The position numbers and the translations under genes are program-made. A stretch of 64,000 bases of DNA. Source: Scyliorhinus canicula (lineage: Eukaryota). The stretch lies in assembly GCF_902713615.1 (NCBI RefSeq), contig NC_052161.1, forward strand, positions 60,967,424 through 61,031,423, written 5' to 3'. The notes beneath the pieces were generated by a model. The model searched no databases and was not told where the DNA came from. It saw only the letters and a list, made by a program, of their open reading frames with translations. Every line of letters begins with the position of its first letter. Positions within the stretch are counted from its first letter, which is position 1. This document shows, piece after piece, positions 6,093 to 49,467 of the stretch.

Positions 6093-6104
6093 GAAACTGA
6101 AACT
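6093..6104 (-). promoter_or_regulatory. ISRE of IFIT-A
   Basis: GAAACTGAAACT (AGTTTCAGTTTC on minus), a perfect ISRE consensus upstream of exon 1. Confidence 0.85.
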
Positions 6105-6564: not shown

Positions 6565-6579
6565 TGGCCCTGAAGAGAA

Positions 6580-25562: not shown

Positions 25563-26184
25563 CTGGAAGAGAAAAAAGCCCATCAAAATTCAGCTCAGAC
25601 TAACTGAATTATTTTCCAGCCCCTCCATCTAGTTTTATCATATAGCGCTGGTCCTGACTCAGTACTCAATGGCCCTGAAACCTCTGGTAACACATTGATT
25701 ATGTCAGCAAAATAAAGGGATTTACTTCATAACCTTTGTCTGTGCTTACACTTTTCTCATTTCTGTTAGTTGATATACTATCTGGAGGACATTTAAGTTC
25801 CTCACAAAATGAACAGTGAATCTCAACCACCTCCATGCTCAATGGGATGAAGAGGAGCTCTGGTTGAAGTACTCAATCGCCTATTGGTTTTGCCCAGTAC
25901 ATCACCTTCTCATTCTGCTCTGTAGGCCCCTCCTCACCGAGACTGCCTGTAGTCCCAGCATTGGCTCCACTCAAACCTGACACTGCTGAGTCTACAGAGC
26001 TGCTGGCCTGTCAATGGACTGGCTGCTCTCTCAGGTGGGACCTCCTTCCGAGTGAAGTGTGAAGTCGCAAGATAATTAATGCTGCTACCAGTGTTAAATT
26101 GATTCAGTGTTAGCTCCTCTTGAACCTTTAGCTGGGGTGTGGGGTTAGGATATGACGACTGTACCCTGTAAAATCCAGGCCGAT

Positions 26185-26373
26185 GAAATGAAAAAATGAA
26201 ATGAAAATCGCTTATTGTCACAAGTAGGCTTCAAATGAAGTTACTGTGAAAAGCCCCTAGTCGCCACATTCTGGCGCCTGTTCGGGGAGGCTGGTACGGG
26301 AATTGAACCGTGCTGCTGGGCTGCCTGGTCTGTTTTAAAAGCCAGCTATTTGGCCCTGTGCAAAACCAGCCCC
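26185..26373 (-). mobile_element. Short tRNA-derived SINE with (tttca)n tail; other copies at ~14830-14985, ~38990-39102, ~59735-59911
   Basis: Four near-identical copies of tgaaatgaaaatcgcttattgtcac...cccctagtcgccac...gggaattgaacc. Confidence 0.8.
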
Positions 26374-26584
26374 GGATGTTGAATTCTCATCCGGCTGAAA
26401 ATCTCCCTTCATTACATTGCTCAGGTGTTAAATCAAGCCAGCATCGGGCTTTTGTAGTGGTTCAGTTGGGTGTTAAAGATTCTGCAGCACTATTAGAGGC
26501 AGAACAAAAAGTTGTACTTCCCACATTCTTACCACAAGCAACACCACCAGAAACAGATGGCTGGTTGCACGTCGAATTGCTATT

Positions 26585-26695
26585 TTTGGAAACACGTCCC
26601 TGACATCTGATTGTATTCCCTGGATTACACGCTCCTGACATATGACCATATCCCTTGGATTAGAGCGCCCCTGACATGTGAATGTATCACCTGGC
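26585..26695. repeat. Three degenerate units of the 36-bp minisatellite
   Basis: acacgtccctgacat...tattccctggattacac...cctgacatgtga matches the 6.6-8.5 kb unit. Confidence 0.75.
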
Positions 26696-26999
26696 TGGGA
26701 TTTTACACTCTTTCGCCGAATGTGCTCGGGGACAGGAGCAGAAATCTCCCGAGGTCACGTCACACTGACATAAAATCATGAATAAACTGCCACAGTGCCA
26801 GGGGACGGTGTGCAATGCCTGGGCAATCACGGGAGGAAATGTAGGGCAGGGGTCAGTGCCCAGGCAGTCGCAGGATACAATGCCGTGTGGGGGTTGCGTG
26901 ATGGGAGCGTGGGTAGGGGTGCGGTGGGATGTTCCAAGTAAATTTCTGGCAGCCTTTACAAATGGCGCCCCAATCTTCAAAAAAAGAAGTTGCAAGAAC

Positions 27000-27220
27000 G
27001 GCATGCGGCACAATGGCTAGCACTGTTGCCTATGGCGCTGAGGACCCGAGTTCGATCCCGTCTCTGGGTCACTATCCATGTGGTGTTTGCACATTCTCCC
27101 CGTGTCTGCGTGGGTTTCACCCCCACAACCCAAAGATGTGCAAGGTTAGGTGGATTGGCCACGCTAAATTGCCCCTTAATTGAGAAAAAAAATAATTGGG
27201 TACTCCAAATTTATATAAAA
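27000..27220 (+). mobile_element. tRNA-derived SINE
   Basis: V-SINE-like body; flanking direct repeat aaaaagaagttg. Confidence 0.8.
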
Positions 27221-30200
27221 AAAGAAGTTGATGGCAGGGTGGCTTAATCAGAGTCGGCCACCCAGTGTGATGTAGAGAGACCCACCCCTTACCTTTTTTG
27301 TAACCTCCAATGTACTGCATTCATTGTATTCCATATATTTTTGATACGTATCATTTTCTATCTTGACATGATTTTAAAATTTATTATCACATAATCGTTA
27401 CAGTGCAGAAGGAGCCCATGCCGTCTATCGTCTCTTCAAATGAGCAAACAAGTATTAAACAAACAACTATACAGTAACTAAAACAAATAGCAAATAGACA
27501 ATAACTAAACTGGTCAAGGCAGGGATAGGAAGTTGGCACAAATGAACTTAAAACCTGTTTTACAAAACTGTTGGGTACAGGATGCATTCTGCCCTTAATG
27601 CAATTAACAAAATGTGAAATTGCCAACAGAAATTACTGGCACATTATTTATTTATCCAGCTGTGGTCATTAGATAAGGAAATCACTTGGCTGTCAGTAGG
27701 ATGTTTAGAACTGTTACCCTGGAAACAAGTGAAACATGTGAGGTAACAGGCAGACCACGGCAGCAATGAGAGATAATGGGCCAAAGTTGCTGACTTGAGC
27801 TTGGAACAAAACAGCAGCATTTCAGAGTTGTCGGTCAATGATTTGTCAGCCAAAGGGGTATGATATTTTGTGGAGCAGTCAAAGTCTGCCCGACTAGAGC
27901 CCTCAGACTGACCATATAAAGTGGGAGTTAAGAGGTGGCCGACTTGAATCTCCTTCCTGTGTCTGAGGAGGCTTTGGGGTAACAAACTGGTGAACACCAC
28001 ACTTCTTCTGAGACACACCAGATGGAGGACGGGACGTCCCAGGGATCGGGCACTCAACCTGGAGGCCAGGGCTCTGATAATCCCCAAGATGACATGCCTC
28101 TGGACCCAGTTGTTCCTCAGTTGCTGGAGCTCCAAGGGCAGAGTCAGGAGTAGCAGGAAGGAATGTGCACATCACTCTTCAGATTGCAAGGCTGACTGGA
28201 GGAGTCCCATCACATTTTGTTGAAGGAGATTGTGCCAGCATTCTGAGGTAACCAAATCAACACTGTAATGTTGCAGACGCAGTGGAGACCTTGGTGTAGA
28301 AAATGCACTACATGCCACGGGATGTTCATTCAATGGCTTGTGGCATGCACTCCATGGTTCAGGGAATCAACTCCGTGGTGCGGACACTTGTGAGCATCCA
28401 CGTGTTCCAGCTCCAGAGGATGTCAGAGATTCTCGAGCTCACAATAGTTGCCCCTCTATCCCACGAAGGAAGCCAGGGTCCCTCTCGCACCCATCATCGT
28501 TGTGGAAGTCCTGACACTATGATTCTCTGGGAATTGCACAGAAAGTTTGAACTTGTGATGGACAATTCCCTGACTCCACTGCAAACCCCTGAAAAAGCCT
28601 CCAAATCGGAGTTTGTGTCAGAGACTTTGAGAGTTTTGATTTACTCATTTGAATAGTCACCCAGGAAATGTTAGCAGAACACGTCTGTGGGTGGATTTCC
28701 TGTGCTCCCCACTGCCTGGTTCTCCACCAGTAGCGGTAGGCGGCCAGCCGTTCGCCAGCGGCAGGATCTTCTGTCAATAGAATTTCCCATCGAATCAACC
28801 CACGCCCCCCATCAAACCTCCCTCCCCCCGCTGCCGCCGCCTGGAAACCTGGGGCGGAGGTTCGTCGTCAATGATACCAGAAGATCCCAAAATCTGGAAA
28901 ATTCCGCCCGTATTTAGCTCCTGGGAAACAAATCAGATGACATGTCCCTCAACCCCCCCCCCCCCCCCCGCGCCCCCGCACCGGCACAACCTCATTTGAA
29001 CCCACAACCTAACTACCCCCTCGACCTCCTCAACCCCTCAGCTCCCCACTCTAGCCAGCCCCTGACCGCTCACCTCTGACCTCAGGCACCCCTTTAACAA
29101 GATCTGACTAGCCACCTGATCTGATGCCTCCCTGATCCATTTACCCCTGGCTCACCTATCCACTTACCCACCCACAAACGTATTCAGCTGCCATCCTGAC
29201 TACATACCTCAGCCACTTAACGGCTTACATATGTACATACTCACCCATTCACTCCATATTCATTCATTTATACACTGGGAAATGCTTGGGAAAGTTTAAA
29301 CGCTATCAGAATACAGCAACTAGTGATATAAAGTGAGGGTGCGGTTTTTGTGTAGATTCTTTTTGCTGCTCCCTGTGAGGGGTCTTGCGCAGAGGGAATT
29401 CTGCAGGACCCTCTATCAGCAGTCAGAGCTTTTATAACCTTTACAGGTAGGTGAGTAGTTTTCTGCCTGATCAGAAATTTTGGACCCATGTCCCCCTGTA
29501 CTAGACTCAGCAATCAGAGAAAGCCCAGACTCAGAGGTAAGTGTTTTACCCAGAGTCCAGAGTTTTTCCAGGGCTAGGCTGGCAGACCCCGATGAGTGGC
29601 ATGAGAGAGGTCGGGAGCCTAGGCCAGGGGAAAGGTAAAGTGGGAAGTATGACCATGGGCGAGGGGAGAACTCTGATGGGCTCAGGCAACCCGGAACAGA
29701 GGCTCCCTCCACCACCCTCCATTTCCAGGTAAAGCTGTGGGGATATCCGAATACTGTGGACTTCCCCCTGCTGCAGGCTGCAAGTAAAACACTGGGGGGG
29801 GCTGGATGAGGTCAGTTAAGGACCTTACTACGCCCAATGCCAGACAGCACAGGCAAACCTCCCACCAACCCCTGTAAAGTTTTAAACAGGTCAGGGGCAG
29901 GTGGGTGGGTGGCAGGATGGCCACCCGCAGGATTTTATGAACTTGCCACCTTTACCCATTTAAAGGGAGCTAAAAATCCAGCCCTAAGGTCTTAAATCCT
30001 GTTCTCCTCCTTAATCCATTCTGTCTTCAATGCCTACTTACCCTCATCATATCAGACGGTATCATTGTAATAATTTCATCCTTAATCGACGAGGCTATTC
30101 CTCCTCCTACCTTTCATCATATCTTTCCTGAAGGCCCGGTATCCTGGTATATTCAGTTCCCAATCCAGACCACCTTACAGCCATGCTGGGTATCATGTCA

Positions 30201-30639
30201 GACCCTCCAAGGTGGATTTTCAATTGCAATTCATTCAATGTGTTCCTCATATTTGGTGCGTTTATAGAATGAACGAGACACACACTGTAACCTGAGCTTC
30301 TGCTCTATGTTTTACAAACATATTTCCTATTGCTTTCTGCACCTGAGACCTACTCCCTCATTACTCATTCAAAATTCTGGTGACATCCTATTTCTCATTT
30401 CCACTATTACCCTAGTCTCAAGCTGGTTACGGTGGAGTCCTGAGAGTACAATACCTTCTTTTCCCAGCACGGATGCCAGTTTACCATGGAATTGCATCCC
30501 TCTTCCCACATCACCCCATCAGCCACATGTTCACCTCCCAATATCTACACCAATTTACACATGGCCTGGTTAATAAGCTGGAGAATTAGTGTGTCAGCAA
30601 TCTTTGATCGCATATTTCCTTGCTCCTAACTATTCACTT

Positions 30640-32430
30640 GCTTTAAACATCTGAATGTTGTTTCACAGATTACTGAACAAACAGTCCAACTCAAACAAAG
30701 GCCAATTGTTATCATTCAAACCTGGCTCCAGTTCAATATAAAATTGCTGGCTCTTTTCCCAGATTGAACAATCTTTCCTTTTCTTTTCTTTCTCCCCAGG
30801 TTTTCTACTTTAATCCACGAGTTCACTTCACATAAAACACAGGTTGGTATCGGGTGGAAATTCTACAGCATACCGAGGCGCTTTTCATAACTGACCCAAT
30901 TTTACAACCATATACAATGCTGGTGTCAACAACGACAATGGAGACCGATGCCTTTGTCCTCTTAGACGGACCTCTTGTTGAAGACCAAGTTGTGCAATGT
31001 TTGCTAAACTGTGCTGGCACAGCTGACTGTGTGCTGCATCTCATGCTGGATGGTAACCGTTTGAGAAAGGTAGCTGCCCAGATCTTGGAAGTGTTCAAAA
31101 ATTTCTAAGGTCTCCCATCAACGCTGATAGCTGGAGTAGGAAGTACTTGTTCCAGGGAGGGATACTGGTGGCTAATCGTGATCTTGCTGATGTTGCATGG
31201 AAGGCCCATCTTTTTCTATGCAGAGTTGAAGACATGGGCCAGGATTGCCCCTTACCTGGCGGGGCGGGGGGTCCCGGCGTGTCGGAGTGGCATGAACCAC
31301 TCCGGCGTCAGGCCGCCCCAAAGGTGCAGAAGTCTCTGCACCTTTAGGGGCCAAGCCCTCACATTGAGGGGCGAGGCCCGCGCCGGAGTAGTTTCAACTC
31401 CGCCGGCTGGCGTGAACGGCCTTTGGTGCCACGGCAGCCGGGGATGAAAGGACCATGGGGGTGCCCCCACGGTGGCCTGGCCCACAATCGGGGCCCACCG
31501 ATTGGCGGGCGGGCCTATGCCGTGGGGGCACTCTTTTTCTTCCGCCTTCGCCATGGTCTTCACCATGTGGAGGCGGAAGAGATCCCCTCCCCTGCGCATG
31601 CGATGGTATGATGTCAGCAGCCGCTGATGCTCCGGAGCATGCGCGGACCTACGCCGGCCGGCGAAGTCATTTCGGCCCCGGCTGGCATGGCGCCAAAGGC
31701 CATTCACGCCAGCCGGTGGAGTGGGAACCACTCCGGCGCGGGCCTAGCCCCTCAATGTGAGGGCTTGGCCCCTAAAGGTGCGGAAACGCCACTCCAACAC
31801 GCCGGGACCCCCGTCCCACCGGGTAGCGGAGAATCCCAGCCATGGTCTGAATGCTGCTTGCAATATGGGCCACAACTATGCACTTGTTTCAATTTTGTAT
31901 TGTGGATATGCTGGTAGGTCAGCTTACTCAGGCTGAAAAAATCTTCCTGTCAGGTAGAAGCTCAATAATGAACCCTTGGAATTTCATCATAAATGTGTTC
32001 CATGACCAGGCAGAAGTAGATAGTGATGGAGGTTGCTGCAATCACATAGCATTGCTGACATTCCAGATGTGAAAGGTCTCTGCCTCTAATCATTACAAAG
32101 GACAGATGTTGTCTTACCATCATGCAAGATTGGCAGGAGTTTTACAAATTTTGCTGGACATCCAAGTTTCTGGAAAACTTAACAAAGGGCTTCACGGTTA
32201 ATTTGTCAAATGCCTTTGGCAGATCAAGAAAGGTCATGTAGATTTTGTTGTGTTCTTATAACGATATGTCAAGATTATTTGTTGTATAAGACACAAGGCA
32301 CCGATCACTCATAAAGGACTGAGTAAACACATTCTGGGATCATTTATTAAAACTAGGCACATCAAACAGTCTTAAATTGTTCCATAGCTTGCAGCACTAT
32401 AAGCTGTCTTTCGTAAAAGTGAAACTAAAA
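30640..32430 (-). mobile_element. Old RTE-like LINE remnant interrupted by a MITE
   Basis: Minus-strand TFLDLPKAFDKINR and FQDLGSYLS motifs, heavily decayed. Confidence 0.55.
31237..31841. mobile_element. Fold-back MITE (Harbinger-like TIRs); relatives at ~28689-28909, 46269-46961, 48162-49116, ~49690-50078, ~51885-52552
   Basis: Termini ggccaggattgcc...ggagaatcccagcc flanked by atg/atg, with ~200-bp inverted arms. 48162-49116 has a 3-bp TSD aat. Confidence 0.75.
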
Positions 32431-32714
32431 CTGGAACATACTATACATACATTATTGCCTTTTTAGTAATGTATATAGTCACATCTTAAAGGCAACGCTC
32501 AACAGAGCTCTTTGCATTTTTCCAGAAACCGTTCATGAATTTGTCAAGTGACAAAGGTCATATTGATAGTTCCCCAGTTGGTCAGGGACCATATTGGATG
32601 TCTGGAAGAAGACCTCTGGTGATGGGTATGATGCAGTTCAGGGAGACTCATGGACTCATGTGAGAATCTTCCCCAGAGAATCAGAGGGGACTAGTATCTA
32701 CAAATGCTTAATTA

Positions 32715-33916: not shown

Positions 33917-34153
33917 TGTGGTGATCCAGTGAGTAATTGTGTGTGTGCTTGGATTAGGGGATGTACAGCAGTACCTGTACTACAGGTTCGCCGGTAGCCC
34001 CTGCCGCTAGCTCCGCCCACAAGGAGCCGTATAAATATGGATGAGTTCTCCTGAACAGCCATTCTATCAGCTGCAGTCGGAGGATAAACATCTAACTGTA
34101 ATATAGCCTCTCTTGTACCCATTTGTGTCTTTAGTACAATTCATAGCACATCA
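33917..34153 (+). mobile_element. Solo LTR (Gypsy-type)
   Basis: TGTGGTGA...CATCA termini, internal TATAAAT, exact 5-bp TSD GCACT (33912-33916 and 34154-34158). Confidence 0.85.
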
Positions 34154-34488: not shown

Positions 34489-34667
34489 TTATTTTAATTC
34501 ACCAACAGCACTTAGGTATTCTTAATTGGCAGGATCAAACTCCAAAGCCTTTTCAAAATATTCAATAGCTTTACCCTTCTCCCCATCCAACTGGTGCAAG
34601 AACCCAAGAACACCAAGGGCCTTGCTGTCTCTTGGATTCCTGTGAAGTCGTCTTTCTGCTATCCACT
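34489..34667 (-). pseudogene. IFIT: IFIT C-terminal relic
   Basis: Translates WIAERRLHRNPRDSKALGVLGFLHQLDGEKGKAIEYFEKALEFDPAN*EYLSAVGELK*, homologous to the IFIT-B C-terminus. Premature TAA at 34524-34522; the rest of the exon is absent. Not in the ORF track. Confidence 0.9.
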
Positions 34668-36498
34668 CCTGCTATTCACGTTCTGCCTCACACATGTCTG
34701 TGTTCCAGTAATGTTCTCCTGTCATCACTCCAACTGTGGTCAGATGCTAGAATTGTAATGTATACAAACAGGCACTAATGTTCATATACAGTTCGGTTAT
34801 TATATTATGTGCACAGATGATAGTTCATATATCATCACATCCTCCTCTGTTTCAAGATGATTGTTAAATCTCCGACATGCGCAAATAAACTATAAACAGA
34901 TACATGAATTTTAAATGGATCAAATTGTATGGATGTAAATTTTAAATGTTCATCATTTTAAAAAGTCTATATCAGGCTTTTGCTGCCAGCCCAACTTCCC
35001 GATTAAGATTTGAAGGAAGTGGTTCCGTTTTACTTTGCTCATCTGATTTAGAACATAGAACATACAGTGCAGAAGGAGGCCATTTGGCCCATTGAGTCTG
35101 CACCAACCCACTTAAGCCCTCACTTCCACCCTACCCCCGTAACCCCTCCTAACCGTTTTGGACACTAAGGGAAATTTATCATGGACAATCCTCCATGTCT
35201 TTGGACTGTGGGAGGAAACCAGAGCATCCGGAGAAAACCCCCGCAGACACGGGGAGAACGTGCAGACTCCTCACCTGGGACCCTGGCGCTGAGAAGCCAC
35301 AGTGCTATCCACTTGTGCTACTGTGCTGCCCTGATTTATCTTTGAGCTTTTCAAAGTTTCTTTTGTCCTCTTCGGATCATCCTTTTTTGTGTTTCACCTT
35401 CCCAGACTGATGTTTCTGCCTTGCTTCCAACCTTCTCCCAGTGAAATCACTGTCAGACGTCTCTGCTTTTCTTTTAAAAGCTTCTGCTGCTTTTCCATTG
35501 AAATCGCTCACCAGTTTTGTTTTGAAACTGTTTGCTGGTTTTCCTTTGAAAATTCTCTTGTGCTTGTCGACTTCCGACATGAAAGTTGCGCATTGTTTCA
35601 GTCTCTCGAAGGCACCTGTATCTTCTTGGTCCATCATCCGCTCAGTGGAATCCTCTTTTCTGTTCCCTGTCTGTGGAAGACTAGCCTGTTGATCGGATTT
35701 ATCATTCGGAGCCTGTGCTAACTTTGCATCTGTGTTTATTATCTCATCGTAGCTTTTCCTGTCAAATTGGAATGTGTTAGATCAGTTAATTGCCTGGGGA
35801 CCAGCTAGTCATCAGTAGGGCTATTTTCCTGTGATCTGAGGCCCCCTGGAGTCTCTGGGCCTCCACACAAAGAGTAAACTGGTGTTTAAAAGCATTCCAG
35901 TTGGTGTCTACATTACCAGTCGTGAGGAGTGGGCCAAGAGTCCTGAGTGCTTCCATCTCACTTCACCTGATCGTCTCGAGTTTCGCAGCCGATCTCTTAC
36001 CTGTCGAGCTTCCAATTGTCCTTTTCAGTTTTTCTTGTCGTAACTAGTTTTTCCTAACTGCACTCATTTGACACTTACTCCGTGGTACCATGTAATACTC
36101 TCTGTATGCACGGATGCCGATACATTATCTTTGTGGTTGAAGTGATCAGAGAACATACAGCTTTGTAAATGAACAAAACTGCTTATTAACCAATTTAAAA
36201 AACTAAAGGGTTTCTATGTCTACTATGATTACAGTTGGATACTACGGCTAAATGCAAATAACTATGATTAACTAGTACTAATTATTCTTAACTGAGGAGC
36301 TACTTGATATGCAACTGGGCACGATGCCTGCTATCCATGTTCTGCCTCACATGTGTCTATGTTCCAGTAACATTCTCCTTTCGTCACGCCACCTGTGGTT
36401 GGATGCTAGAATTGTAATGTATACATACAGGCACTAATATTCACATACAGTTTGGTTATTATATTATATACACAGATGGTAGTTCACATATCTTCACA
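34668..36498 (-). mobile_element. Internally deleted Gypsy LTR retrotransposon (5' LTR 36091-36498, truncated 3' LTR 34668-34839; SINE at ~35050-35330)
   Basis: Direct repeat 34668-34839 vs 36327-36498; TG...TACA followed by a TGGTACCA PBS; gag N-terminus TGNVDTNWNAFKHQF; purine tract before the 3' LTR. Confidence 0.8.
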
Positions 36499-39414
36499 GA
36501 CACCAAATCCCAAGAATTATGTATTGTCCTCGGAGGGGTTACAAACTCATTACAAGCATTTGAGCACTTAAAAGGTTAAATTATGAGGTCAAGTGACATC
36601 ATATTTGGCTCATTGAGGGCAGGTTTAGCTCAGTTGGCTGGGCAGCTAGTTTGTTATGCAGGGTGAGTCGAACAACGTGGGTTCAATTCCCATACCAGTT
36701 AATGTTATCATGAAGGCCCCACCTTCTCAAGCTTGCCCCTTGACCCTCAGGTTAAATCACCACCAGTCAGTTCTCTCCCTCAAAGGAGAGGGCAGCCTAT
36801 GGCCATTTGAAACTATGGCGATTTTACTTACTTCCACCATATTGGTTTGAATTTCCTTCACTTTGGAAAGAGTGATCTAAATAACATCTTTAAAAGGATT
36901 AAAAGATTCAGCACATTTCAAAATGAGCTACTGATTCCAAATTTTGTAAACAAATCACTCTTGCCAAAACCCAATCTCTTGGCTCCCATTCTCAATGTCC
37001 CTTTCTTTCCTCCTGTAATGCATCGTGTCCATCTCCCTGATTTAACCACCACTCTCCAGACTCTCAGGTGGCTGAATCCATTCTTGGCCTTCCCATTTTT
37101 TCATTGTTCCCCTCACCCTTCCAATAGCCTGAATTCCAATCTCTTGCTAAAGTCTGCATCTCTCCTCGCCTCACAAGACCCCAGAATTTACAGGCAGGTG
37201 TACAGGATGAGGAGGAGGCTGAAAATGCCTCGAGAACCCAGGCTGGGGAGGGGCAGGTTTGGTCAAATGCAATGGCAGAATCCTGGTATCGTTTAATTGA
37301 CCCATTTCCCATCAGGGAGCCAACCAGATTGACAAACTGGCCAATGGGAAAGAGGGTAAACCAGTTGGATCTTTCAACCTGAGACTTTCAATGAGAGATT
37401 TGACGGGAGGAAGGCGAAGGATTGGGGAATGCTGGGTAGAGACTGCGATAGGCAGAAGAAAGAGGGGCTGCAGTAGGAAAGGTGAGAGAGGCCATGATGG
37501 GGTGGGGAATGCAGACGACTATTGGGATGTAGGAGAAAGACTGTGATGGGGAGGAGTTTGAAAGGCCACAATAAGAAGGGGAGAGAGACCACAAGTGGAA
37601 GGGAAAGGAGAGGACACCATGGCGGGCTGGGGGATGGGGGTGGGGAAGCTGAAATGGGGGGTGAGAGAGAGAAAGAAAATAAAGAAAACAGAGTAGCTGC
37701 AATGTGGAGAGGTGGGTGAGAGGCCACAGTGAGGTGGGGATAGAGAGATTGCAATGAGTAGGTAGAGAGAAACAGTGTGAGGTGAAGTGCGGAGCAGTCC
37801 AAAGATGTGCGGGTTAGGTGGATTGGCCATGCTAAATTGCTCGTAGTGTCCTAATAAAAGTAAGGTTAGGGGGGGTTGTTGGGTTACGGGTATAGGGTGG
37901 ATACGTGGGTTTGAGTAGGGTGATCATGGCTCGGCACAACATTGAGGGCCGAAGGGCCTGTTCTGTGCTGTACTGTTCTATGTTCTATGTTCTAGATACT
38001 GCAATGGGAAATTGGTTGGCAATCAGGAGAGGGGCAGCCAAACGCTTCCTTGTTAGGCCGAGATGGAGCAATAGTGTTGCTCATGGCCCACACAGTGCTG
38101 AGAAATACACTTACCTTGTGGAGCTGCCAGCTCCCACCTCCCTTTCATTGCTATGTTCCTCCACATGCAGGAAACCTGCACAGTAACAATGAATTTTAAA
38201 TCAGGCTCCCAGTTACACAGTGGAACCTGTGTTCTGCATGTTAATGAAATATCCTCTGAACTGTGAATGACTCTCACAGCCTGAGACACACCTCGATATA
38301 TAAGGTGGTTTGTGTGTGAACCACATGTTCGGCACCATATTCTCCTTATTTATAACCCATTGATGGAAGGGTCAAGAACCAAAGGAAACTGATTTAATGA
38401 TTGGCAAAAAAACCAGCAATAATTGAATCTTTATTTATCTGATAATAATCCAGTTGATTCTGAACAATTTTATTTCTCACATTAGGTGCATTTTTTTGCT
38501 TGATAATATTGCCAGTGTGTGTTTATTGCCGATTCAACAGGATCTGTTACATTCTTTAAGATCTATCGAATTGTCAGTATCTGTGGGGAGCTGAACTTTT
38601 TCCAGAGCACTTCTTGCTCCAGTGGTGGAAAGGTCCAACGTGCAGCCCGGGACCTGCAATCCCAGATCTTGCTGCTTCTTCAGAAACACTGGTCTGTCTC
38701 TGGAGAAACACAGTGAGCACAAATAATGAGTATTGTGCCCAAATTATAATTGGCAGGTGGCCGCAGATGGAAAAATAATACATCATATGTGTGGATAATG
38801 AGCTGGGACGCTGAAAGAACAGGAAATCTGTTTTTGTTTGCCGAGCTTCTGCAAGTTTGGTTTAAGGGGCACAGCCCTGCTTCTGTGGGCACTCTGAAAC
38901 AAAGTTACAGATGTTAATATTTAAGCTTAAACAGAAAATCTGCAGAATTGCACAGCACCATACTGAGGTCACGGCCAAAAGCCCATTATGAATGAAATGA
39001 AATGAAAATCGCTTATTGTCACAAGTAGGCTTCAATGAAGTTACTGTGAAAAGCCCCTAGTCGTCACATTCCGGCGCCTGTCCGGGGAGGCTGGTACGGG
39101 AACAATCCCGGCAGTGGGGGGGTTGGAAGATGCAACCCTAAGAGTTTACAGCGACAACTTGCATTGTGTAGCATCTTTAATATAAAGAAATGGATGCTAT
39201 CAAACAAAGTCCGACAGCGAACCCGCAATAAGATATTCGGGCACCTGGTCAAAGAGGAGAGGGTGAGGGAAGCAGCGAGGTTGAGGCAGGTGATTCCAGA
39301 GCTTGGAGCTCGGGCAGCTGAAGAGATGGCCACCAGTGGTGGGTGAAGGAATTGGGAGATGTACAAGAGGCTGGGGAATTGAGGAAATCAACATCAACAT
39401 TGTCACAATAACAT

Positions 39415-40819: not shown

Positions 40820-42439
40820 TGTGGTGAATGTATTCACCGAATGCATGAGCTGCCTGTATAATGATGTGATCTATTGTTACCTTTGACCTGGAAGTGGTGA
40901 TACAAGCTACTTCCAGGTACTGTACTGGAATGCCGGTGGGCTCCGCCTCTGGCTCCGCCCTCACCGGGGCCATATGTAGGCCAACCACCTGTGGGTGGCA
41001 CTCATTTGTACAGCCAACCCTGGCAGGCGTGTTCATGGTTAATAAAGCCTAATGTTCACTCACTCTCACGGTCTCACAGTGAACTGACGGTATAACAATT
41101 TATTAACCATCGACAGCACCATGGAAGCCGCTCTAAAGCCAGATAAGCTCGAACTCGACGCGCGCGGGTCAAAGGCCAAGGAGATCTTTGCACATTGGCT
41201 TTGCTGCTTCGAGGCCTACCTCGACTCCTCCACAATGCCTCCCACGGAAACCTGCAAGCTGCGACTCCTCCACGCTAGGGTGAGCCATCGAATCTCCGTG
41301 ATGATAGAGCAAGCTGCCACGTACGAGGCGGCGGTCGCACCCCTCGAGGCACATTTTGTGAAACCCGTAGCCGAGGTGTTCACCCGCCACCTTCTTACTA
41401 CTTGCCGCCAACGAGCCGGAGAATCGCTGGACGAGTACTGGAAATCCTGACTCTACTCGCGAGGAACTTCAGTTATCGGGATGTGACAGCGGAGGAACAC
41501 ATGAACCTACAGATTCAGGACACCTACGTGGCTGGGGTCCGATCGAATTACATCAGGCAGCACGTGCTGGAAAACGGGACCTCTGTTCTACGGGACACGG
41601 TAAAGCTAGCTACCTCATTAGAGGTGGCCTACCAGAGCCTCAGTGCATTCCCCGCGGGCCCAGTGAACACCTCGTGGACACAATCATCGCGGCCCCCGTC
41701 GGACCCGACTACGTCACAGGCCTGTGCCGCGCACCTGCCGGCCCAACCCGGGGAACCGCAGTGCTACTTCTGCGGCCAGGGTCAACACCCCCGACAGCGT
41801 TGCCCAGCCCGCATAGCAACGTGCAGCAACTGTGGGAAAAAGGGACACTTCGCTCGAGTCTGTCTGGGCCGACCTAAGGCCCAGAAATCAAAAACCCACC
41901 AGGCCCGACCCATGGACCCACAGACCTCGCAATGTGGTTACGTGCCTGCCCGGAACGCTCCCTTCAGATGCGTCATCAGCTCGTGTGACTCGTGGGGGCC
42001 GCCATCTTGGCCGCCTGCTCTGGCACCAACCGACACGTGCGACCAATGGGGGTGGCCATCTTGGACACCAACTTCGCCCCAGCCCGACACGTGCGACTCA
42101 TGGGGGCCGCCATCTAGTGATACCACCGACCACACAGGCTACCCACAGTTTGGGGCAGTCACCCTTGACCAGTCGCAGCCAGAGCATCTGAAAAAGTCAA
42201 TGATGGTCGTCCGGGTCAACGGGCACGAGACCCCCTGACTTTTCGACTTCGGGAGCACGGAGAGCTTTGTCCACCCTGGCATGGTAAGGCGCCGCTCCCT
42301 CAATACCTACCCTGCATCACAAACAATCTCCCTTTCCTCCGGTTCCCATTCGGTCCAGATCCGGGTGTACTGTATCGCTAATCACACGATGCAGGGTGCA
42401 GTGTACACTCGTTTTAAGCTCTATGTCCCCGACCTCTGC

Positions 42440-42470
<31 letters not shown>

Positions 42471-45117
42471 CTGCTCGGATTAGATTTCCAATGTAATCAC
42501 CGAAGCCCGACCCCCGCCCCCTCACGGTATGCAGCCTCGCGACCCTCAAGGTCCCCCCCCCCCCCCCCCTTCGCTCTTCGCGAACCTCACTCCCGACTGT
42601 AAGCCCATCGCCACCAGGAGCAGTCGGTACAGTTCCCTTGACATGACTTTTATCAAGTCGGAGGTCCAGCGACTGTTGAGTGAAGGGATTATCGAGGCCA
42701 GCAACAGCCCCTGGAGAGCGCAAGTGTTGGTCGTCCAGACCGGGGAAAAGAACCGGATGGTTGTGGACTATGAAGCAGCCGGCCAACTCTTCCACTTCCT
42801 CAGGGTCCCCTTCGGTGTCACTAACGGGGTCTCGGTCTTTCAGAGAACGATGGACCGAATGGTGGACCAGTACGGTTTGCGGGCTACATACCCGTACCTG
42901 GACAATGTCACCATCTGCAGCCATGATCAGCAGGACCATGACGCCAACCTTCAGAGGTTCCTCCAGGCCGCCCAATCCCTCAGCATCACGTATAACAAAG
43001 AGAAATGCGTTTTCCGCACAACCCGACTGGCCATCCTCGGCTACATCGTGGAGAACGGAATCCGAGGGCCTGACCCTGACCGTATGCACCTCCTCACGGA
43101 ACTCCCTCCTCCCCACAGCCTCAAGGCCCTCAAATGATGCCTGGATCTGTTCTCCTACTATGCCCAGTGGGTCCCCAACTATGCGGACAAAGCTCGCCCA
43201 CTTATTCAAACCACCACTTTTCCCCTGACGGATGAGGCCCGCTCGGCCTTCAGCCGCATGAAGGCCAACATCACCAAGGCCACAATGCAAGCGATAGACG
43301 AGTCCGTCCCCTTTCAGGTAGACAGCAATGCATCAGGCGTCGCACTGGCCGCCACACTCAACCAGGTGGGCAGGCCAGTAGCATTCTTCTCTAGAACCCT
43401 CCACGCTTACGAAATCCGACACTCCTCGGTCGAGAAGGAAGCACTAGCCATAGTGGAAGCCGTGCAGCACTGGAGGTACTACCTAGCCGGTAGGAGGTTC
43501 ACCCTCGTCACCGACCAGCGGTCGGTCGCCTTCATGTTTGGCAAAGCACAACGGGGCAAAAGAAAAAATTGACAAAATCTTGAGGTGGGGGATCGAACTC
43601 TCCGCCTACAATTACGATATTAAGTATCGTCCTGGGAAGCTGAATGAGCCCCCAGATGCCCTGTCTCATGGCACATACGCCAGCGTGCAAGATGACCAAC
43701 TTCGGGCTATCTACGATGACCTCTGTCACCTGGGGGTCACCCGGCTTACCCACTTCATTAAGGCCCGCAACCTGCCCTTCTCCACTGAGGATGTCAAGGC
43801 AATTACCAGGGACTGCCAGGTCTACGCGGAGTGCAAACCGCACTTCTACTGGCACTTTCAGCGCCTAAGTATCGACTTCAAAAGGCCCCTCCCCTCCACC
43901 AATTGTAATATATACTTTCTAACCGTCGTCGACGCGAACTCCCGCTTCCCTTTCGCTGTCCCCAGCCCTGACATGACCTTGGCCACCGTAATAAAGGCAC
44001 TGCACAGCATCTTCGGTTTCCCTGCCTATGCCCACAGTGACTGGTGCTCATCGTTCATGAGCAATGAGCTGCGTCAGTGCCTGCTCAGCAAAGGCATCAC
44101 CTCGAGTAGGACTATGAGCAATGACCCGCAGGGAAACGGGCAGTTGGAGAGGGAGAACGCGACGGTATGGAAGGCCGTCCTACTGGCCCTCAGGTCTAGA
44201 AGTCTCCCGACCCGCCGCTGGCAGCAGGTCCTCCCCAACGCCCTCCACTGCATTAGATCACTCCTCTGCACAGCCACGAACGAGACCCCTCACGACCGTT
44301 TGTTTGTCTTCCCCAGGAAGTTCATCTTTGGGGTCTCGCTTCTATCTTGGCTGACGACTCCGGGACCTGTCCTTCTCCAGAGGCATATGAGGAGCCATAA
44401 GACTGACCCCCTGGTCGAGAGGGTCCAGCTGCTGCACGCCAACCCCCAGTAGGCCTACATTATGCACCAGAATGGACGACAGGATACGGTCTCCCTACGA
44501 GACCTGGTGCCAGCTGGTTCCCCTGTCAACGCGTTCCCCTACCCGCAGCCTACCATCACCCCCAGCACCCAGCACCCCTTACGCCACCCTGGGTCGCCTG
44601 TATTGTTCCGCACCGGCACTGCCACCACCCCCCTGCCTATCCCCAACCCCCCAACCGTCTCCGACAGGCCAGACTGAGGCTCAATCTCCAGACACAACGC
44701 CCCTGGAGTCACCACCTGCAATAACCATTCCCGCTGCATCGCCAGAGCTGCGGAGGTCCAAAAGAAAGATCCGGCCTCCAGACAGGAGTATTTAATGACC
44801 CACGTCACCCCTGCTGGACTTGATTTTTTTAATAGGGGGTGAATGTGGTGAATGTATTCACCTAATGCATCAGCTGCCTGTATAATGATGTGACCTATTG
44901 TGACCTATGACCTGAAGTGATGCGAACTACTTCTAGGTACTGTACTGGAATCCTGGTGGGCTCCGCCTCTGACACCACCCTCACCGGGGCCAGATATAGG
45001 CCGGCCACCTGTGGGTGGTACTCATTTGTACAGCCGACTCTGGCAGGCGAGTTCATGGTTAATAAAGCCTAATGTTCACTCACTCTCACAGTCTCACAGT
45101 GAATTTACGGCATGACA
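40820..45117 (+). mobile_element. Gypsy (Mag-like) LTR retrotransposon, both LTRs present, decayed gag-pol
   Basis: LTRs 40820-41097 and 44844-45117 (TG...CA), TSD GAATG, PPT at 44831-44843. Gag with double CCHC (CYFC..H..CPA..CSNCGKKGH), RT YLDN with an internal deletion after RMVVDY, RNase H EKEALAIV, integrase region. Confidence 0.95.
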
Positions 45118-45439
45118 GAATGGCTTCCTTCTGCACTGTAGGAATTCTGTGATTCTATGAAGGCCCCGCATCTGAACCTTGCTCCTTGCCTGAGGTGTGG
45201 TGATCCTCAGATTAAATCACCAGCAGCCAGCTCTCCCACTCAAAGGGAAAAATAGCCTGTGGTCATCAGGAACTATGGCAACTTTACTTTGCTTTTTCAA
45301 CCACAAACCTGATCAGAAATAATAACTGAAAGTGCCCAATAACCATAGAGCTGTGCAAAGCCAGTAATACTGCACTATGAAGGCTGGGGGCAATATTCCC
45401 AACTTTTCGGAGTTGATCTTAGTCATCACTGCCCTTCTT

Positions 45440-45760
45440 TAATAATAATAATAATAATCTTTATTAGTGGCACAAGTAGGCTTACATTAACACTGCAATG
45501 AAGTTACCATGACAAGCCCCTGGTCACCACATTCCGGCACCTGTTCGGGTAAACAGAGGGAGAATTCAGAATGTCCAATTCACCTAACAAGCACGTCTTT
45601 CAAGACTTGTAGGCAGAAACTGGAGCACCTGGAAGAAATCCACGCAGACACAGAGAGAACGTGCAGACTCCACACAGACAGTGACCCAAGCTGCGAATCG
45701 AATCCTGGTCCCTGACGGTGTGAAGCAACAATGCTAACCACTGTACCACCATCCTGCCAT
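45440..45760 (-). mobile_element. tRNA-derived SINE; further SINEs at ~36618-36832, ~37795-37992, ~47578-47903, ~54425-54645
   Basis: tRNA-like head and shared bodies/tails. Confidence 0.8.
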
Positions 45761-45769
45761 CCGTGAACT

Positions 45770-46200
45770 TGCATGTCTCAACTCTGACTCAGCAGGTTAG
45801 CAGCTCAATCCCCAACCCGTAGACCTGGTCAAATAATTGAGTCTGGCACTGCTGTGCCGCACTGAGGGAGGTGCTCTATGGTTGGAGGCACCTTTGGATT
45901 AGTCAATCAAACAAGGCTCCCTCTAACCGCTTCAGAGAATGTAAAGGATCCTATGGTGATATTGGAATTAGAGCAGATGAGTTATTTCCGTTGTCTTGGC
46001 AAGTATTTATCCCTTCACCAACATCACTAAAATAGATTACCTGGTCATCATCACATTGTGCAGCTTGTTATGTGCAAACTGTCACCTGCGCTTCCCACAA
46101 CACGACAGTGGCAAAGCCTTGGAAACACACTTTACTGCCTGTAAAACTCTTTGGATGTTCTGAGATTGGGCAGCATGTGATATCATTACAAGTCTATCTT
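45770..46200 (+). mobile_element. Old Deu-domain SINE (SacSINE1/AmnSINE1-like)
   Basis: gtaaaggatcctatgg...gagcag...tgtcttggcaagtatttatcccttcaccaacatcact...agattacctggtcatcatcacattg resembles the Deu core as recalled. Confidence 0.7.
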
Positions 46201-47180
46201 TTTATCTAATTGTTAATATCCTCAATCACAATCAGACATAGACCAGGAGATTAGGAACAAGACACTTTGGGCTTTGACTCTCCAATCCTGCGGTTATGTC
46301 GCAGGATCCGCCTCGTCTGATGACCAGAAATATGGCAGCGCCCCCACACGGATCCTCTGTCCGGTAGGGGGCTAGCAGCCGTGCAGCGTATAGCCCCCGG
46401 CTTTACCTGCAGATACGGCCGGGAAATGGCCGGTTCCGTGGCCGCACATGTGCACAATGGCGGCCTGCGGCAGCCGTGCCGTGCAACATGGCACCAGCTG
46501 CACACGGACCCAGCTTGCCAAAAACTGCCCCCCCTATAACCAGCCTCGCCAGGCCTGGATCCCCAGCCCCTCCCACCTCGCCACCAGTCCCCCCCAGTCC
46601 CCGCCAAATCCCCATCCTGCCAACAGAATAGTTCCCCTCCCCACCCCCTCCAGCAGAATAGTTCCCCTCCCCACCCCCTCTCGACTATGGCGGCGCTGGG
46701 CTCAGTACGCTGCCACCAGGTGAGGTCTCCGAATGGAGCGAATCCGTTGGGGGCTCGACCCTTCGGGGGAGGAGCTTCGGGGGATGACCTCAGTTGGCGT
46801 CCTGAGGCCGTCCATACGGTGTGCGGTGTACTCCCAGAGTATGCCATTTTTCAGGGGGCGGAGCTTCGCAAATACCGGACCACCCCGCTTCCAGCGTACA
46901 TGGGGATTCTCCAGCCTATCGCTGAACCCGGTTTCGGAGTCGGTGATAGGAGAATCCCGCCTCACGTATTTTAAAAGGGTTTCACAGATTAATAATATTT
47001 ACTGTTGCTTATAGCACTTGCTAATGAAGAGAGGGTGATTAGAAGTCTATCTTTTTATCTAATTGTTAATATCCTCAAACACTATCAAACATAAATCAGG
47101 AGATTAGGAACAAAAGGTATTTGTTTTCAGATGAATAATATTTACTGTGTTTATAGCAATTGCTAATGAAGAGTGGGTGC
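46190..47180. repeat. ~140-bp tandem duplication whose first copy is split by a MITE
   Basis: 46190-46260 matches 47043-47112, and 46980-47037 matches 47125-47180. Confidence 0.8.
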
Positions 47181-49335
47181 AAGATAAGGAGACTAAAACA
47201 GCAGAACAGTCACTGGAGCAGAGAGCAGGACTCTCCGGCAGCAGAGTCTTGGAAACAGGCAACAGTAACTGCCACTTCTTGGGCTTTTGGCGAAGATCAC
47301 ACATTGGATCAAGTGGGAGATCAGGTGCAATGTCTGTCCTGGTCGGTGTGGATCTAGTCTGTCCCTTTCTGGGGGAACATGGACTGAATCTGAATTCATT
47401 TTAGGAGCAATCATGGTGATGGATCAGGGACTTGCCCCATGTAGTCTGCACAATGGCTTTGTAACTCTAAAAGAACAGGAACCCGAAAGGTTTTCAACAC
47501 CAGCATCTGCTGACCAGCTGAGTGACTCTGGAGCCAAATTCAGATTCAAGATGGTCAATTGAATCCTGCAGTCTAATGTAGAATCATATAATCATAGAAT
47601 TTACAGTTTAGAAGGCGGCCGTTCGGTCCATCGAGTCCACACCGGCCCTTGAAAGAACACCCTACTTAAGCCCACATCTCCACCCTATCCCCGTTACCAA
47701 TATCCCCGCAACCTTTGGACACTAAGGGGCAATTTAGTGTTGCTAACCCACCAACCTGCACATCTTTGGACTGTGGGAGGAAACCGGAGCACCCGCGCAG
47801 ACACGGGGAGAAAGTGCAAACTCCACAGATAGTCACCTGAGGTCAAAATTGAACCCATGTTCTTTTTGCTGTGTGGCAATAGTGCTAACCACTGTGACGC
47901 CCCGATGTATTCTCCGTTTCTCTGGGAATTACAGTGCTGACTGATTTTGTCAGTTCATCAAGATCAGCTGCCCACAGTTTAATAATGAATAATTAGTTAA
48001 TAATTCCAGATAGCCGTGATCCATAATATCTGTCTGCGGTTATTTACAGAATGCTTGATTCCACATTGTGAGAGTTTAAAATTGAAGTTTATCTTTGTAT
48101 TTTCTGTAAAATCTGCTGGGAAAATAAGACTTACTGTACTTAAAATATTGCCTGATACAATAGCCGGGATTAACCGGCCTCGTCACGCCCGACTTGGTGA
48201 CACGATAAAACCATTGAATCTCGCAGTACGCCTCTGGCGAGATTCGCGATGATTGAGACGTCTCCCAAGATTCAACCGACCCTCACAAGACGGCATGATC
48301 TGGATCGCGCCTTCGCTGGGCGTGATCCAGATCAGCATATTTAAATGAGTCATTAGACTCATTTCAATATGTTTGCGCCAATTCTCCCGGCACCCGGGAC
48401 TGCCTTGACCGGACGCTGTTTAGTACTGGTCCACACAAGTGTGGATTACTCATAACAACACCTGAGGGGTCTCCCAGGCCATTGGAGACCACTAGGTGGT
48501 CAGGCTCTGGGCAACATGGTAACCTGGCTCTCATGCTGGAAACTGGGCAACTTGGCATTGCCAGCCGGACACCTGGCAGTGGCACTGCCTGGGTGGCACT
48601 GCCAGTTTGGCAGGGGCATTGCCACAGTGCAAGGCTGGTCATGCCAAGGTTCCACAGTGCCAGGTTGCCTGTGCCAGTGGTCAGCCTGGGGTGCCATGCC
48701 CTTCAGAGGCGACATGGGCTTAAGTGAGGTGCTCCTTCCAAGAGCCAGCGTAGACTCGATGGGCTGAACGGCTTCCTTCTGCACTGTAAATTCTATAAAA
48801 CAGGATGAGGGGTTCTCGAGGACCCCGTGGGGGGTGGGACATTGAGGGGGGGGAACCATGGTGGGGTTGCTGAGGAGAGTCGAAAGATCGGGGCTCCCTT
48901 TAAAAATGGCCCTCCGATCCGTGAGTAGTCTTCCTGCATTGGGTCAGTGCCAGAAGTGACTAAAGTGCAGTCTCAATGGGACGTTCCTAACTGAGGCCAA
49001 AAAAACAGGCAAAGTGTTGTTGAATAGGGGAGTGTTTCCCGCCACTGCAGCCACTGAGGAACATCCTGCTGAACCCGCCCGAAAGCAGACTCTGTTTATC
49101 TCATTGAATTGCAACCAATATTATAAATAGATCTGCCTTTTGTGTCTAATTTGTTCTGACAATCACTCGTCTCGGTGTGACAGTATATACATATCTGTAT
49201 GACTCACTGAGACAAATAATCCCACTCTCCTGTTTCGACTCTCGTGTAATTTAAACTATTGTATTTCAGAAAACAAGCTCCTTGTCCGCTGGTCAACGCC
49301 TAATCGTTTAACACACAGAATGTAAATAAATTTAC

Positions 49336-49340
49336 CTCAT
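49336..49340 (-). CDS. IFIT: IFIT-type coding exon 1 (ATG AG | GTAAAT); partner exon either IFIT-B or the destroyed 34.5-kb gene
   Basis: cagcgttATGAGgtaaat; flanks are homologous to the IFIT-A exon-1 region (aaaacaagctccttg, tgagaat.gaaactgaaac). Confidence 0.75.
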
Positions 49341-49456
49341 AACGCTGCTCGAAAGCCAAATTACTTCTTAAACTTTAGCTGCACCGGCGAGTTGTCGATG
49401 AAAATTGCTTGATGTGTTCTCATTTCCAGGTTAATTATACCACGAGTCTGAGAATA

Positions 49457-49467
49457 GAAACTGAAAC
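49457..49467 (-). promoter_or_regulatory. ISRE upstream of the 49340 exon 1
   Basis: GAAACTGAAAC 117 bp upstream of the ATG, in the same context as 6093-6104. Confidence 0.8.

What the first reader, a model, noticed from the sequence alone, without database searches (positions are those of the whole stretch)
25563..49467. IFIT-B lacks an obvious ISRE/exon 1 of its own: possible promoter capture through interchangeable phase-2 micro-exons
Seen: the nearest canonical ATG-AG|GT exon with an ISRE is 23.8 kb upstream, and a destroyed same-strand IFIT relic (34489-34667) lies in between, so that exon probably belonged to the dead gene. A degenerate alternative (ATG AA|GTAAAT at 25730-25726, patchy similarity to 49326-49440, no clear ISRE) would give a 163-bp intron. 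Inference: all IFIT first exons here are 5-nt phase-2 units, so any upstream promoter could splice in frame to any downstream exon 2 (B or even A), forming a modular promoter-swap system.
Basis: partly seen in the sequence, partly recalled or inferred. Interest (0 to 1): 0.7.

Follow-up and report, generated by a model that had tools for sequence, protein, structure and literature searches.

The report
Catshark IFIT-B has a crippled first exon
In a catshark cluster of interferon-induced antiviral (IFIT) genes, IFIT-B still has its own interferon-responsive promoter and start-codon micro-exon 6.7 kb upstream, but that exon has lost its splice site. Whether the gene now borrows the intact first exon of a dead neighbour 23.8 kb upstream could not be tested.

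Summary
The window is Scyliorhinus canicula DNA with tandem IFIT genes.
- IFIT-B exon 2 lies at 24080-25562 on the minus strand.
- A stop-containing IFIT relic lies at 34662-34492.
- An intact ISRE/TATA/ATGAG|GT exon lies at 49468-49336.
- A lone ATGAA|GTAAAT lies at 25730.

One claim needs correcting. It has an ISRE, a TATA-like box and TTATGAG, but TGATCG stands where the GT donor should be. An ISRE followed by TTATGAG occurs 3 times in the window, against 0.003 per shuffled window.

The minus strand therefore reads E1-E2(relic)-E1(no donor)-E2(B)-E1-E2(A).

The indirect evidence is split:
- RefSeq models of IFIT-B use cryptic local exons (30196-30111 and 27354-27293). The S. torazame ortholog uses a third one.
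- Words of the 49.3 kb exon occur in three runs of one study. Two of those runs also hold IFIT-B exon 2.

The "modular promoter-swap system" is just the long-known phase-2 micro-exon architecture of IFIT genes.

The parts
24080..25562 (-). IFIT-B exon 2, holding the whole coding sequence except ATG+2 nt. The stop codon is 24082-24080 and the phase-2 acceptor AG is 25564-25563.
   Evidence: It is 100% identical to S. canicula XP_038629046/XP_038629045 apart from their N-terminal extensions.
25726..25730 (-). It has no ISRE and a weak donor (PWM score 4.5).
   Evidence: It matches the exon-1 consensus TTATGAGGTAAA at 11 of 12 positions. No gene model uses it.
27293..27354 (-). First coding exon of RefSeq isoform X2 (begins MIRIKNIW...), ending AAG|GTAAGG in phase 2.
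27913..28172 (-). Open frame homologous to the first coding exon annotated for the S. torazame ortholog (P0002 residues 1-87), ending TG|GTCAGT.
   Evidence: Identity is 86% aa with E 1.5e-45, which shows that P0002 is syntenic with IFIT-B.
30111..30196 (-). First coding exon of RefSeq isoform X1 (begins MIPSMAVRW...), ending AAG|GTAGGA in phase 2. A TATAAA box lies at 30266-30261.
   Evidence: The CDS range of 6117 nt equals 30196..24080.
32308..32432 (-). IFIT-B's own vestigial promoter and exon 1. It holds the ISRE AGTTTTAGTTTCACTTTT (32432-32415), the TATA-like TTATAGT (32402-32396) and ATGAG (32312-32308). ATGAG is followed by TGATCG, so there is no GT donor.
   Evidence: The composite motif occurs 3 times in the window against 0.003 per shuffle. 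Global alignment to the IFIT-A module gives p about 0.001.
34492..34662 (-). Relic of the exon 2 of a dead upstream IFIT unit (residues 426-482), with an in-frame stop.
34668..36498 (.). Element bounded by 172-nt direct repeats (34668-34839 and 36327-36498, 87% identical). It abuts the relic where the rest of the dead exon 2 should be.
40820..45117 (+). Truncated LTR retroelement with gag zinc-knuckle and integrase remains. Its LTRs are 88-89% identical. It lies inside the putative 23.8 kb intron.
49336..49468 (-). Intact IFIT promoter and exon 1: ISRE 49468-49451, TATAAT 49439-49434, ATGAG 49340-49336, donor GTAAAT (PWM score 7.8). Most likely the first exon of the dead unit.
5935..6104 (-). 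IFIT-A's own promoter and exon 1, used here as the comparison module: ISRE 6104-6087 and ATGAG 5939-5935. IFIT-A exon 2 starts at 436.
   Evidence: The RefSeq CDS range of 6956 nt fits this exon.

Best explanation
The minus strand carries three tandem IFIT units. Each was originally an ISRE promoter plus a 5-nt ATGAG exon 1, followed by one large exon 2.

- Unit 1 keeps an intact promoter and exon 1 (49468-49336). Its exon 2 is reduced to a 171-nt relic with a stop codon (34662-34492).
- Unit 2 is IFIT-B. Its own promoter and exon 1 survive at 32432-32308, 6.7 kb upstream of exon 2. The ISRE, a TATA-like box and ATGAG are present, but the GT donor is gone. Exon 2 (25562-24080) is intact.
- Unit 3 is IFIT-A, which is complete.

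So IFIT-B is an intact exon 2 whose canonical exon 1 can no longer be spliced. It sits downstream of an intact exon 1 whose exon 2 is dead.

Shown: the anatomy, the alternation of exon 1 and exon 2, and the phase compatibility.

Inferred and undecided: how exon 2 gets its start codon today. There are two routes.
(a) Splicing from 49336 over 23.8 kb, that is, capture of the dead unit's exon 1. This gives the canonical MSDQEK... protein under ISRE control.
(b) Cryptic local exons at 30.2 kb and 27.3 kb, as in RefSeq. These could be driven by IFIT-B's own ISRE promoter at 32.4 kb.
For: - Homology and coordinates of exon 2, the relic and IFIT-A come.
- The three ATGAG micro-exons and three ISREs are all on the minus strand in the same orientation, spaced 120-165 nt apart.
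- An ISRE (<=1 mismatch) followed 60-200 nt downstream by TTATGAG is found 3 times, against a mean of 0.003 in 300 shuffles.
- The 32.4 kb module aligns to the IFIT-A module with p about 0.001.
- Donor PWM scores are 6.6 (IFIT-A), 7.8 (49.3 kb) and 10.0 (IFIT-C). At 32308 the score is -16.5, and the weak neighbouring GTs score -0.4 and 1.3.
- A 6.7 kb intron matches IFIT-A and its sister P0008, both about 5.5 kb.
- The relic has an in-frame stop.
- The ortholog P0002 in S. torazame is syntenic. It has no other called gene within 10 kb upstream.
Against: - The 32.4 kb module was found with a composite motif built after seeing the two intact modules.
- Single-sequence nhmmer did not report it at E<=10.
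- Its alignment to the 49.3 kb module alone is not significant (p about 0.09).
- No orthologous DNA could be fetched to show that the donor loss is fixed or old.
- No read-level evidence was obtained.
Confidence: 0.7

Rival explanations
1. Exon-1 capture. After interferon, the main IFIT-B mRNA starts at the 49.4 kb ISRE/TATA promoter and splices 49336->25562. This reconstitutes one working gene from the intact halves of two damaged tandem paralogs. A likely order of events is: the upstream exon 2 dies, read-through splicing then gives IFIT-B a second promoter, and IFIT-B's own donor becomes free to decay.
For: - The two units carry complementary defects.
- The 49.3 kb module keeps its ISRE, TATA, ATG and donor, although the only remnant of its exon 2 has drifted to 82% nt identity.
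- The exon 2 frame is open in both S. canicula and the syntenic S. torazame ortholog, with 0 gaps over 491 residues.
- All 3 sampled words of exon 49336-49412 are held by runs X16, X18 and X25 of one study. X16 and X18 are also among the best holders of IFIT-B exon 2.
- CDS spans that imply first introns of roughly 18-30 kb are annotated elsewhere in Scyliorhinus IFIT clusters.
Against: - No 495-aa MSDQEK isoform of IFIT-B exists in the protein collection. The cluster holds only X1 and X2.
- No annotated CDS spans from 49340 across the IFIT-B or IFIT-A loci.
- Runs X1, X15 and X17 hold exon 2 well but none of the exon-1 words, although only 3 words were sampled.
- The nature of study P8 (RNA or DNA) is unknown.
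- Strong cryptic donors lie in between.
Confidence: 0.35
2. Local rescue. IFIT-B is transcribed from nearby starts, either its own ISRE promoter at 32.4 kb or the TATAAA at 30266. It takes its ATG from cryptic phase-2 exons (30196-30111 or 27354-27293), or starts at the internal Met34. The 49.4 kb module is then an orphan promoter.
For: - RefSeq isoforms X1 and X2 use exactly these exons.
- Both donors are strong, at 8.3 and 11.3.
- The S. torazame ortholog is also annotated with a local non-canonical exon.
- Other paralogs are annotated from Met34 or with odd N-termini.
Against: - The three annotated 'first coding exons' in the two species are not homologous to one another. They encode peptides with no relatives, as expected of cryptic or pipeline-chosen exons.
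- The 86% aa identity of the torazame-type exon is about what neutral drift would give (inference).
- No transcript evidence was seen here.
Confidence: 0.4
3. The 49.3 kb exon was always IFIT-B's own first exon, with a repeat-swollen intron. The relic would be an inserted fragment and the 32.4 kb module a chance match.
For: - Long first introns are annotated in this family.
- The relic is only 168-171 nt long and abuts a repeat-bounded element.
Against: - The 32.4 kb composite is expected 0.003 times per window by chance.
- It sits at the typical exon 1-exon 2 distance.
- Exon 1 and exon 2 alternate strictly along the strand.
Confidence: 0.07
4. The ATGAA|GTAAAT site at 25730 is IFIT-B's working exon 1, with a 163-nt intron, giving MNDQEK...
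For: - It matches the exon-1 consensus at 11 of 12 positions.
- An 'MN' start exists in paralog P0022.
- A GTATATCA box lies about 40 nt upstream.
Against: - There is no ISRE.
- The donor score is only 4.5.
- nhmmer reported no hit for it in searches at E<=10.
- No such protein is in the collection.
Confidence: 0.05
5. The missing G at 32308 (ATGAG-TGATC instead of ATGAG-GTGATC) is an assembly error or a private null allele. IFIT-B would then be an ordinary two-exon gene with a 6.7 kb intron.
For: One extra G would give GAG|GTGATC. By the same PWM this scores about 5.9 (hand calculation, not a tool output), close to IFIT-A's 6.6. It would also explain why aligners found no canonical junction.
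Against: The prior for an assembly error at exactly this base is very low. The S. torazame ortholog also lacks a canonical model.
Confidence: 0.05

Closest known systems
Canonical vertebrate IFIT gene architecture (Liu et al. 2013, PMC3688568)
   Same: Two exons. Exon 1 is the 5' UTR plus ATG plus 2 nt. ISREs lie within about 200 bp of the TATA box. Genes sit in tandem clusters that expand in a lineage-specific way. IFIT-A, IFIT-C and the 49.3 kb module fit this exactly.
   Different: IFIT-B's own exon 1 has lost its donor. The only intact same-strand exon 1 upstream belongs to a dead neighbour 23.8 kb away.
IFIT genes with extra exons or without ISRE (mouse IFIT2 and IFIT1B with three exons; human IFIT1B and zebrafish IFIT5A without typical ISRE; PMC3688568)
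   Same: They depart from the two-exon, ISRE-driven plan within an otherwise canonical cluster. The RefSeq X1 and X2 models of IFIT-B would be of this sort.
   Different: Here the ancestral ISRE module is still recognisable next to the gene, and the defect can be placed at the splice donor.
Conjoined genes / transcription-induced chimeras of tandem genes (PMC2953495, PMC2174484)
   Same: A transcript starting at an upstream gene's promoter would splice to exons of the next gene on the same strand.
   Different: In those cases both parents are live genes and the chimera is usually minor. Here the upstream parent is dead, so the chimera would be the only way to make the canonical protein. No such transcript has been shown here.
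Birth-and-death evolution and complementary degeneration of duplicates (general knowledge, not tested against a paper here)
   Same: Tandem paralogs suffer different disabling lesions.
   Different: The lesions fall in different exons of neighbouring copies, so the intact parts could still form one transcription unit.

Membership tests
IFIT gene family | TPR-repeat protein of about 470-500 aa homologous to IFIT1/IFIT5 | tested here: met
   The query is 100% identical to S. canicula 'IFIT5-like' XP_038629046, there are 1444 homologs with E<=0.001, and the hits carry Pfam TPR families.
IFIT gene family | Exon 1 is the 5' UTR plus ATG plus 2 nt, spliced in phase 2 to one large exon 2 | tested here: inconclusive
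   The acceptor is phase 2. IFIT-B's own ATGAG exists at 32312-32308 but lacks a GT donor. A heterologous intact ATGAG|GT lies at 49340. RefSeq uses other exons.
IFIT gene family | ISRE close to the TATA box or start site | tested here: met
   ISREs lie at 32432-32415, 49468-51 and 6104-6087, each 120-165 nt upstream of an ATGAG.
IFIT gene family | Induction by interferon or poly(I:C) | not testable with these tools
Conjoined gene / read-through chimera | Two neighbouring same-strand parent genes | tested here: met
   The dead unit (49.3 kb exon 1 plus the 34.6 kb relic) and IFIT-B are both on the minus strand.
Conjoined gene / read-through chimera | A transcript that joins exons of both parents | tested here: inconclusive
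   Junction 49336->25562 was not observable. Exon-1 words occur in 3 runs of one study of unknown type. RefSeq has no such isoform.
Conjoined gene / read-through chimera | Both parents are independently functional genes | tested here: not met
   The upstream parent's exon 2 is a 171-nt relic with a stop codon.

The most novel reading that the evidence does not exclude
Two neighbouring IFIT paralogs with complementary lesions now work as a single interferon-inducible gene. One has lost its exon 2 and the other its exon-1 splice donor. The surviving ISRE/TATA/ATGAG exon of the dead copy would be spliced over 23.8 kb to IFIT-B's orphaned exon 2. More widely, the universal 5-nt phase-2 micro-exon would let exon 1s and exon 2s of the catshark IFIT cluster be recombined at the RNA level. 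RefSeq CDS ranges elsewhere in the cluster hint at this: two IFIT genes share one CDS start, and one CDS spans about 1 Mb.
Probability: 0.3. Interest if true: 0.5.

Novelty: new member of a known kind. Interest (0 to 1): 0.33.

Why it matters
- It gives a concrete, testable map of how one interferon-stimulated gene cluster decays and may repair itself. The map shows which promoter belongs to which exon 2 and exactly where IFIT-B's own first exon is broken.
- It flags the RefSeq N-termini of IFIT-B (isoforms X1 and X2) and of its S. torazame ortholog as probably cryptic, which matters for anyone expressing shark IFITs.
- If the 49336->25562 splice is real, it would be a clean natural case of an orphaned coding exon kept interferon-inducible by the promoter of a dead neighbour. 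If it is not, the locus is ordinary birth-and-death evolution.

Tried and rejected
No junction could therefore be read. Local searches used a masked copy or skipped those places. One offline motif count read the whole window file.
- The look-up of encoding contigs returned no DNA for any shark record because the files are too large. Orthologous promoters could not be aligned; only CDS spans were usable.
- A search with the N-terminal 130 residues found no transcript-derived catshark fragments whose 5' UTR could have identified exon 1.
- P0001 and P0004 are not on record as the longest products of their genes.
- Single-sequence nhmmer with the IFIT-A, 49.3 kb and IFIT-C modules found only the IFIT-A/49.3 kb pair. 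The 32.4 kb module emerged only from motif searches.
- I considered the repeat shared by 26194-26372 and 59736-59912 as a possible promoter. I rejected it because it is a three-copy SINE-like repeat, which looks tRNA-derived by eye.
- IFIT-A's intron and IFIT-B's upstream region share only the first 140 nt and some repeats, so IFIT-A's intron cannot be used to trace IFIT-B's.
- The protein tree gave no resolved 1:1 partner for IFIT-B. Orthology with P0002 rests on synteny.
- Literature searches found nothing on catshark IFIT transcripts or on sharing of IFIT first exons.

Full report
**Identity of the locus**

The open frame 24083-25561 (-) is 100% identical to two Scyliorhinus canicula RefSeq proteins named "IFIT5-like" isoforms X2 and X1 (XP_038629046 and XP_038629045). 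They lie on a 145-Mb chromosome. tblastn of this protein on the window finds four things:
- IFIT-A, with exon 2 running from 436 off the left end of the window (minus strand)
- IFIT-B, at 25562-24080 (minus strand)
- a 57-codon relic at 34662-34492 (minus strand)
- a divergent, frame-shifted IFIT-C at 60292-61710 (plus strand)

**Check of the observation**

- On the minus strand at 49468-49336 there is an ISRE (TGTTTCAGTTTCTATTCT), a TATAAT box 11 nt downstream (10 bases between), and ATGAG|GTAAAT about 95 nt further on.
- The IFIT-B acceptor (pyrimidine tract, then CAG|TGACC) is phase 2. ATGAG joined to exon 2 therefore reads MSDQEK....
- The relic translates with an in-frame stop. It is homologous to IFIT-B over only 168 nt, at 82% identity.
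- ATGAA|GTAAAT stands at 25730-25726.
- IFIT-A has its own module: ISRE 6104-6087 and ATGAG|GTAAAG 5939-5935. The RefSeq CDS span of IFIT-A is 6,956 nt, which fits that exon exactly.
- IFIT-C has ATGAG|GTAAGA at 59495-59499 and a 792-nt intron.
- The IFIT-A and 49.3 kb modules are homologous (nhmmer E about 3e-5).

A search for the ISRE with one mismatch allowed gave a third hit on the minus strand at 32432-32421. Read in context, it is a full module:
- the ISRE AGTTTTAGTTTCACTTTT, which also matches the strict ISRE pattern
- 12 nt further on, the TATA-like TTATAGT
- TTATGAG at 32314-32308, about 120 nt after the ISRE, the same layout as at 49.3 kb (127 nt) and in IFIT-A (165 nt)

The composite [quoted passage not shown] occurs three times in the window. 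All three are on the minus strand. In 300 shuffled windows the mean count was 0.003. A global alignment of 32300-32440 to the IFIT-A module beats 999 of 1000 shuffles. The region has no other copy in the window, so it is not a repeat.

After ATGAG the sequence is TGATCG, so there is no GT. On an approximate donor matrix whose base frequencies I recalled from memory, this scores -16.5. The intact micro-exons score 6.6, 7.8 and 10.0. The neighbouring GTs score -0.4 (phase 1) and 1.3 (6 nt downstream, phase 2).

The module lies 6.7 kb upstream of IFIT-B exon 2. That is the usual distance in this clade: IFIT-A and its sister P0008 both have first introns of about 5.5 kb.

**Resulting anatomy**

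Reading 5' to 3' on the minus strand:
1. exon 1 at 49.3 kb, intact
2. exon 2 relic at 34.6 kb
3. exon 1 at 32.3 kb, donor lost
4. exon 2 of IFIT-B at 25.5 kb, intact
5. exon 1 at 5.9 kb, IFIT-A
6. exon 2 of IFIT-A at 0.4 kb

Each exon 2 has its own exon 1. IFIT-B is not promoter-less; its canonical first exon simply cannot be spliced.

The dead unit's intron and exon 2 were reshaped by two elements. One is bounded by 172-nt direct repeats and abuts the relic (34668-36498). The other is a truncated LTR retroelement (40820-45117) whose LTRs are 88-89% identical.

**How IFIT-B is expressed today**

Direct evidence could not be obtained. No shark DNA or transcript contig could be fetched. The indirect evidence is divided.

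Against capture:
- RefSeq has only two IFIT-B isoforms. Their first coding exons are at 30196-30111 and 27354-27293. Both end in AG|GT in phase 2 and have strong donors.
- No MSDQEK form is in the protein collection.
- No annotated CDS runs from 49340 across the IFIT-B or IFIT-A loci.
- The S. torazame protein P0002 is the syntenic ortholog. Its N-terminal extension maps to window 28172-27913 at 86% identity with E 1.5e-45. It too is annotated with a local non-canonical exon, and a different one.

These three exons are not homologous to one another and encode orphan peptides. They look like cryptic exons, or like ATG sources picked by the annotation pipeline. Several other paralogs also have odd N-termini or start at Met34. 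The annotation is therefore weak evidence either way.

For capture:
- The 49.3 kb module keeps all its functional motifs although its own exon 2 is destroyed.
- The exon 2 frame of IFIT-B is open in both species.
- The three sampled words of 49336-49412 are held by three runs of one study. Two of those runs are among the best holders of IFIT-B exon 2. Three other good holders lack the words, and the type of the study is unknown.
- CDS spans that imply first introns of roughly 18-30 kb are annotated in both Scyliorhinus species.

My odds are about 0.35 for capture as the main induced route and about 0.4 for local rescue. Small shares go to the other rivals.

**The "modular promoter-swap" idea**

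A 5-nt, phase-2 exon 1 is the conserved IFIT gene plan (PMC3688568). It makes every IFIT exon 1 formally compatible with every exon 2, so the idea is not a new mechanism.

One lead is worth noting. The RefSeq CDS ranges in the main catshark cluster include two IFIT genes that share one CDS start, with spans of 187.6 kb and 24.5 kb. One IFIT gene has a CDS that spans 999,557 nt across 14 other TPR-family (IFIT-like) gene calls. These may be real long-range splices. They may equally be artefacts of mapping junction reads onto near-identical exon 2 starts. IFIT-A and IFIT-B are about 96% identical in the exon but only 79% identical in the adjacent intron.

**The 25730 site**

It matches the exon-1 consensus at 11 of 12 positions and the 49.3 kb exon over about 24 nt (p about 0.014). 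It has no ISRE and a weaker donor (4.5), and it is used by no gene model. It could be chance or a scrap of an old exon 1. I give it about 0.05 as a working exon.

**Verdict**

- The evolutionary part of the interpretation, that the far exon belonged to the dead gene, is strengthened.
- The claim that IFIT-B has no ISRE or exon 1 of its own is wrong in detail.
- Capture is a fair but unproven hypothesis.

This is an ordinary birth-and-death locus with a neat, testable twist.

Noticed in passing
window 60292-61722 (+): IFIT-C is read in two frames (60290-60991 and 61000-61710), and the ORFs 60317-61045 and 61003-61722 overlap. This means one frameshift near 60991-61003, from either a pseudogene or an assembly indel. 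Its own ATGAG|GTAAGA exon (59495-59499) and TATA box (about 59390) look intact.
   Followed up: partly
S. canicula chromosome outside the window (look-up of encoding contigs locus of P0022): The RefSeq CDS of IFIT P0022 spans 999,557 nt across 14 other TPR-family (IFIT-like) gene calls. Two IFIT genes (497 aa and 460 aa) share the same CDS start coordinate, with spans of 187.6 kb and 24.5 kb. This is either real sharing of first exons or mis-mapped junctions.
   Followed up: no
window 594-826: A palindromic MITE-like element (56-nt outer arms 91% complementary, 51-nt inner arms) sits about 12 nt beyond the point where IFIT-A/IFIT-B homology ends (581 in A, 25702 in B).
   Followed up: partly
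window 5600-5876 and 6225-6565: The IFIT-A promoter and exon 1 are bracketed by two inverted copies of a repeat that are 95% identical to each other. More copies of this repeat are scattered through the window.
   Followed up: no
window 14829-14981, 26194-26372, 59736-59912: There are three same-orientation copies (86-91% identical) of a SINE-like repeat that looks tRNA-derived by eye. Each starts with GAAATGAAA motifs that mimic loose ISREs.
   Followed up: partly
window 36581-36592 (+): TTATGAGGTCAA, one mismatch from the exon-1 consensus, lies on the plus strand just outside the repeat-bounded element next to the relic. It is unexplained and may be chance.
   Followed up: no
window 27913-28172 (-): The exon that S. 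torazame annotation uses as the start of the IFIT-B ortholog is also an open frame with an ATG and a GT donor in S. canicula. The 86% aa identity is about what neutral drift would give.
   Followed up: partly
window 6990-8500: There is a long array of diverged tandem repeats upstream of the IFIT-A promoter, seen as many offset self-matches.
   Followed up: no
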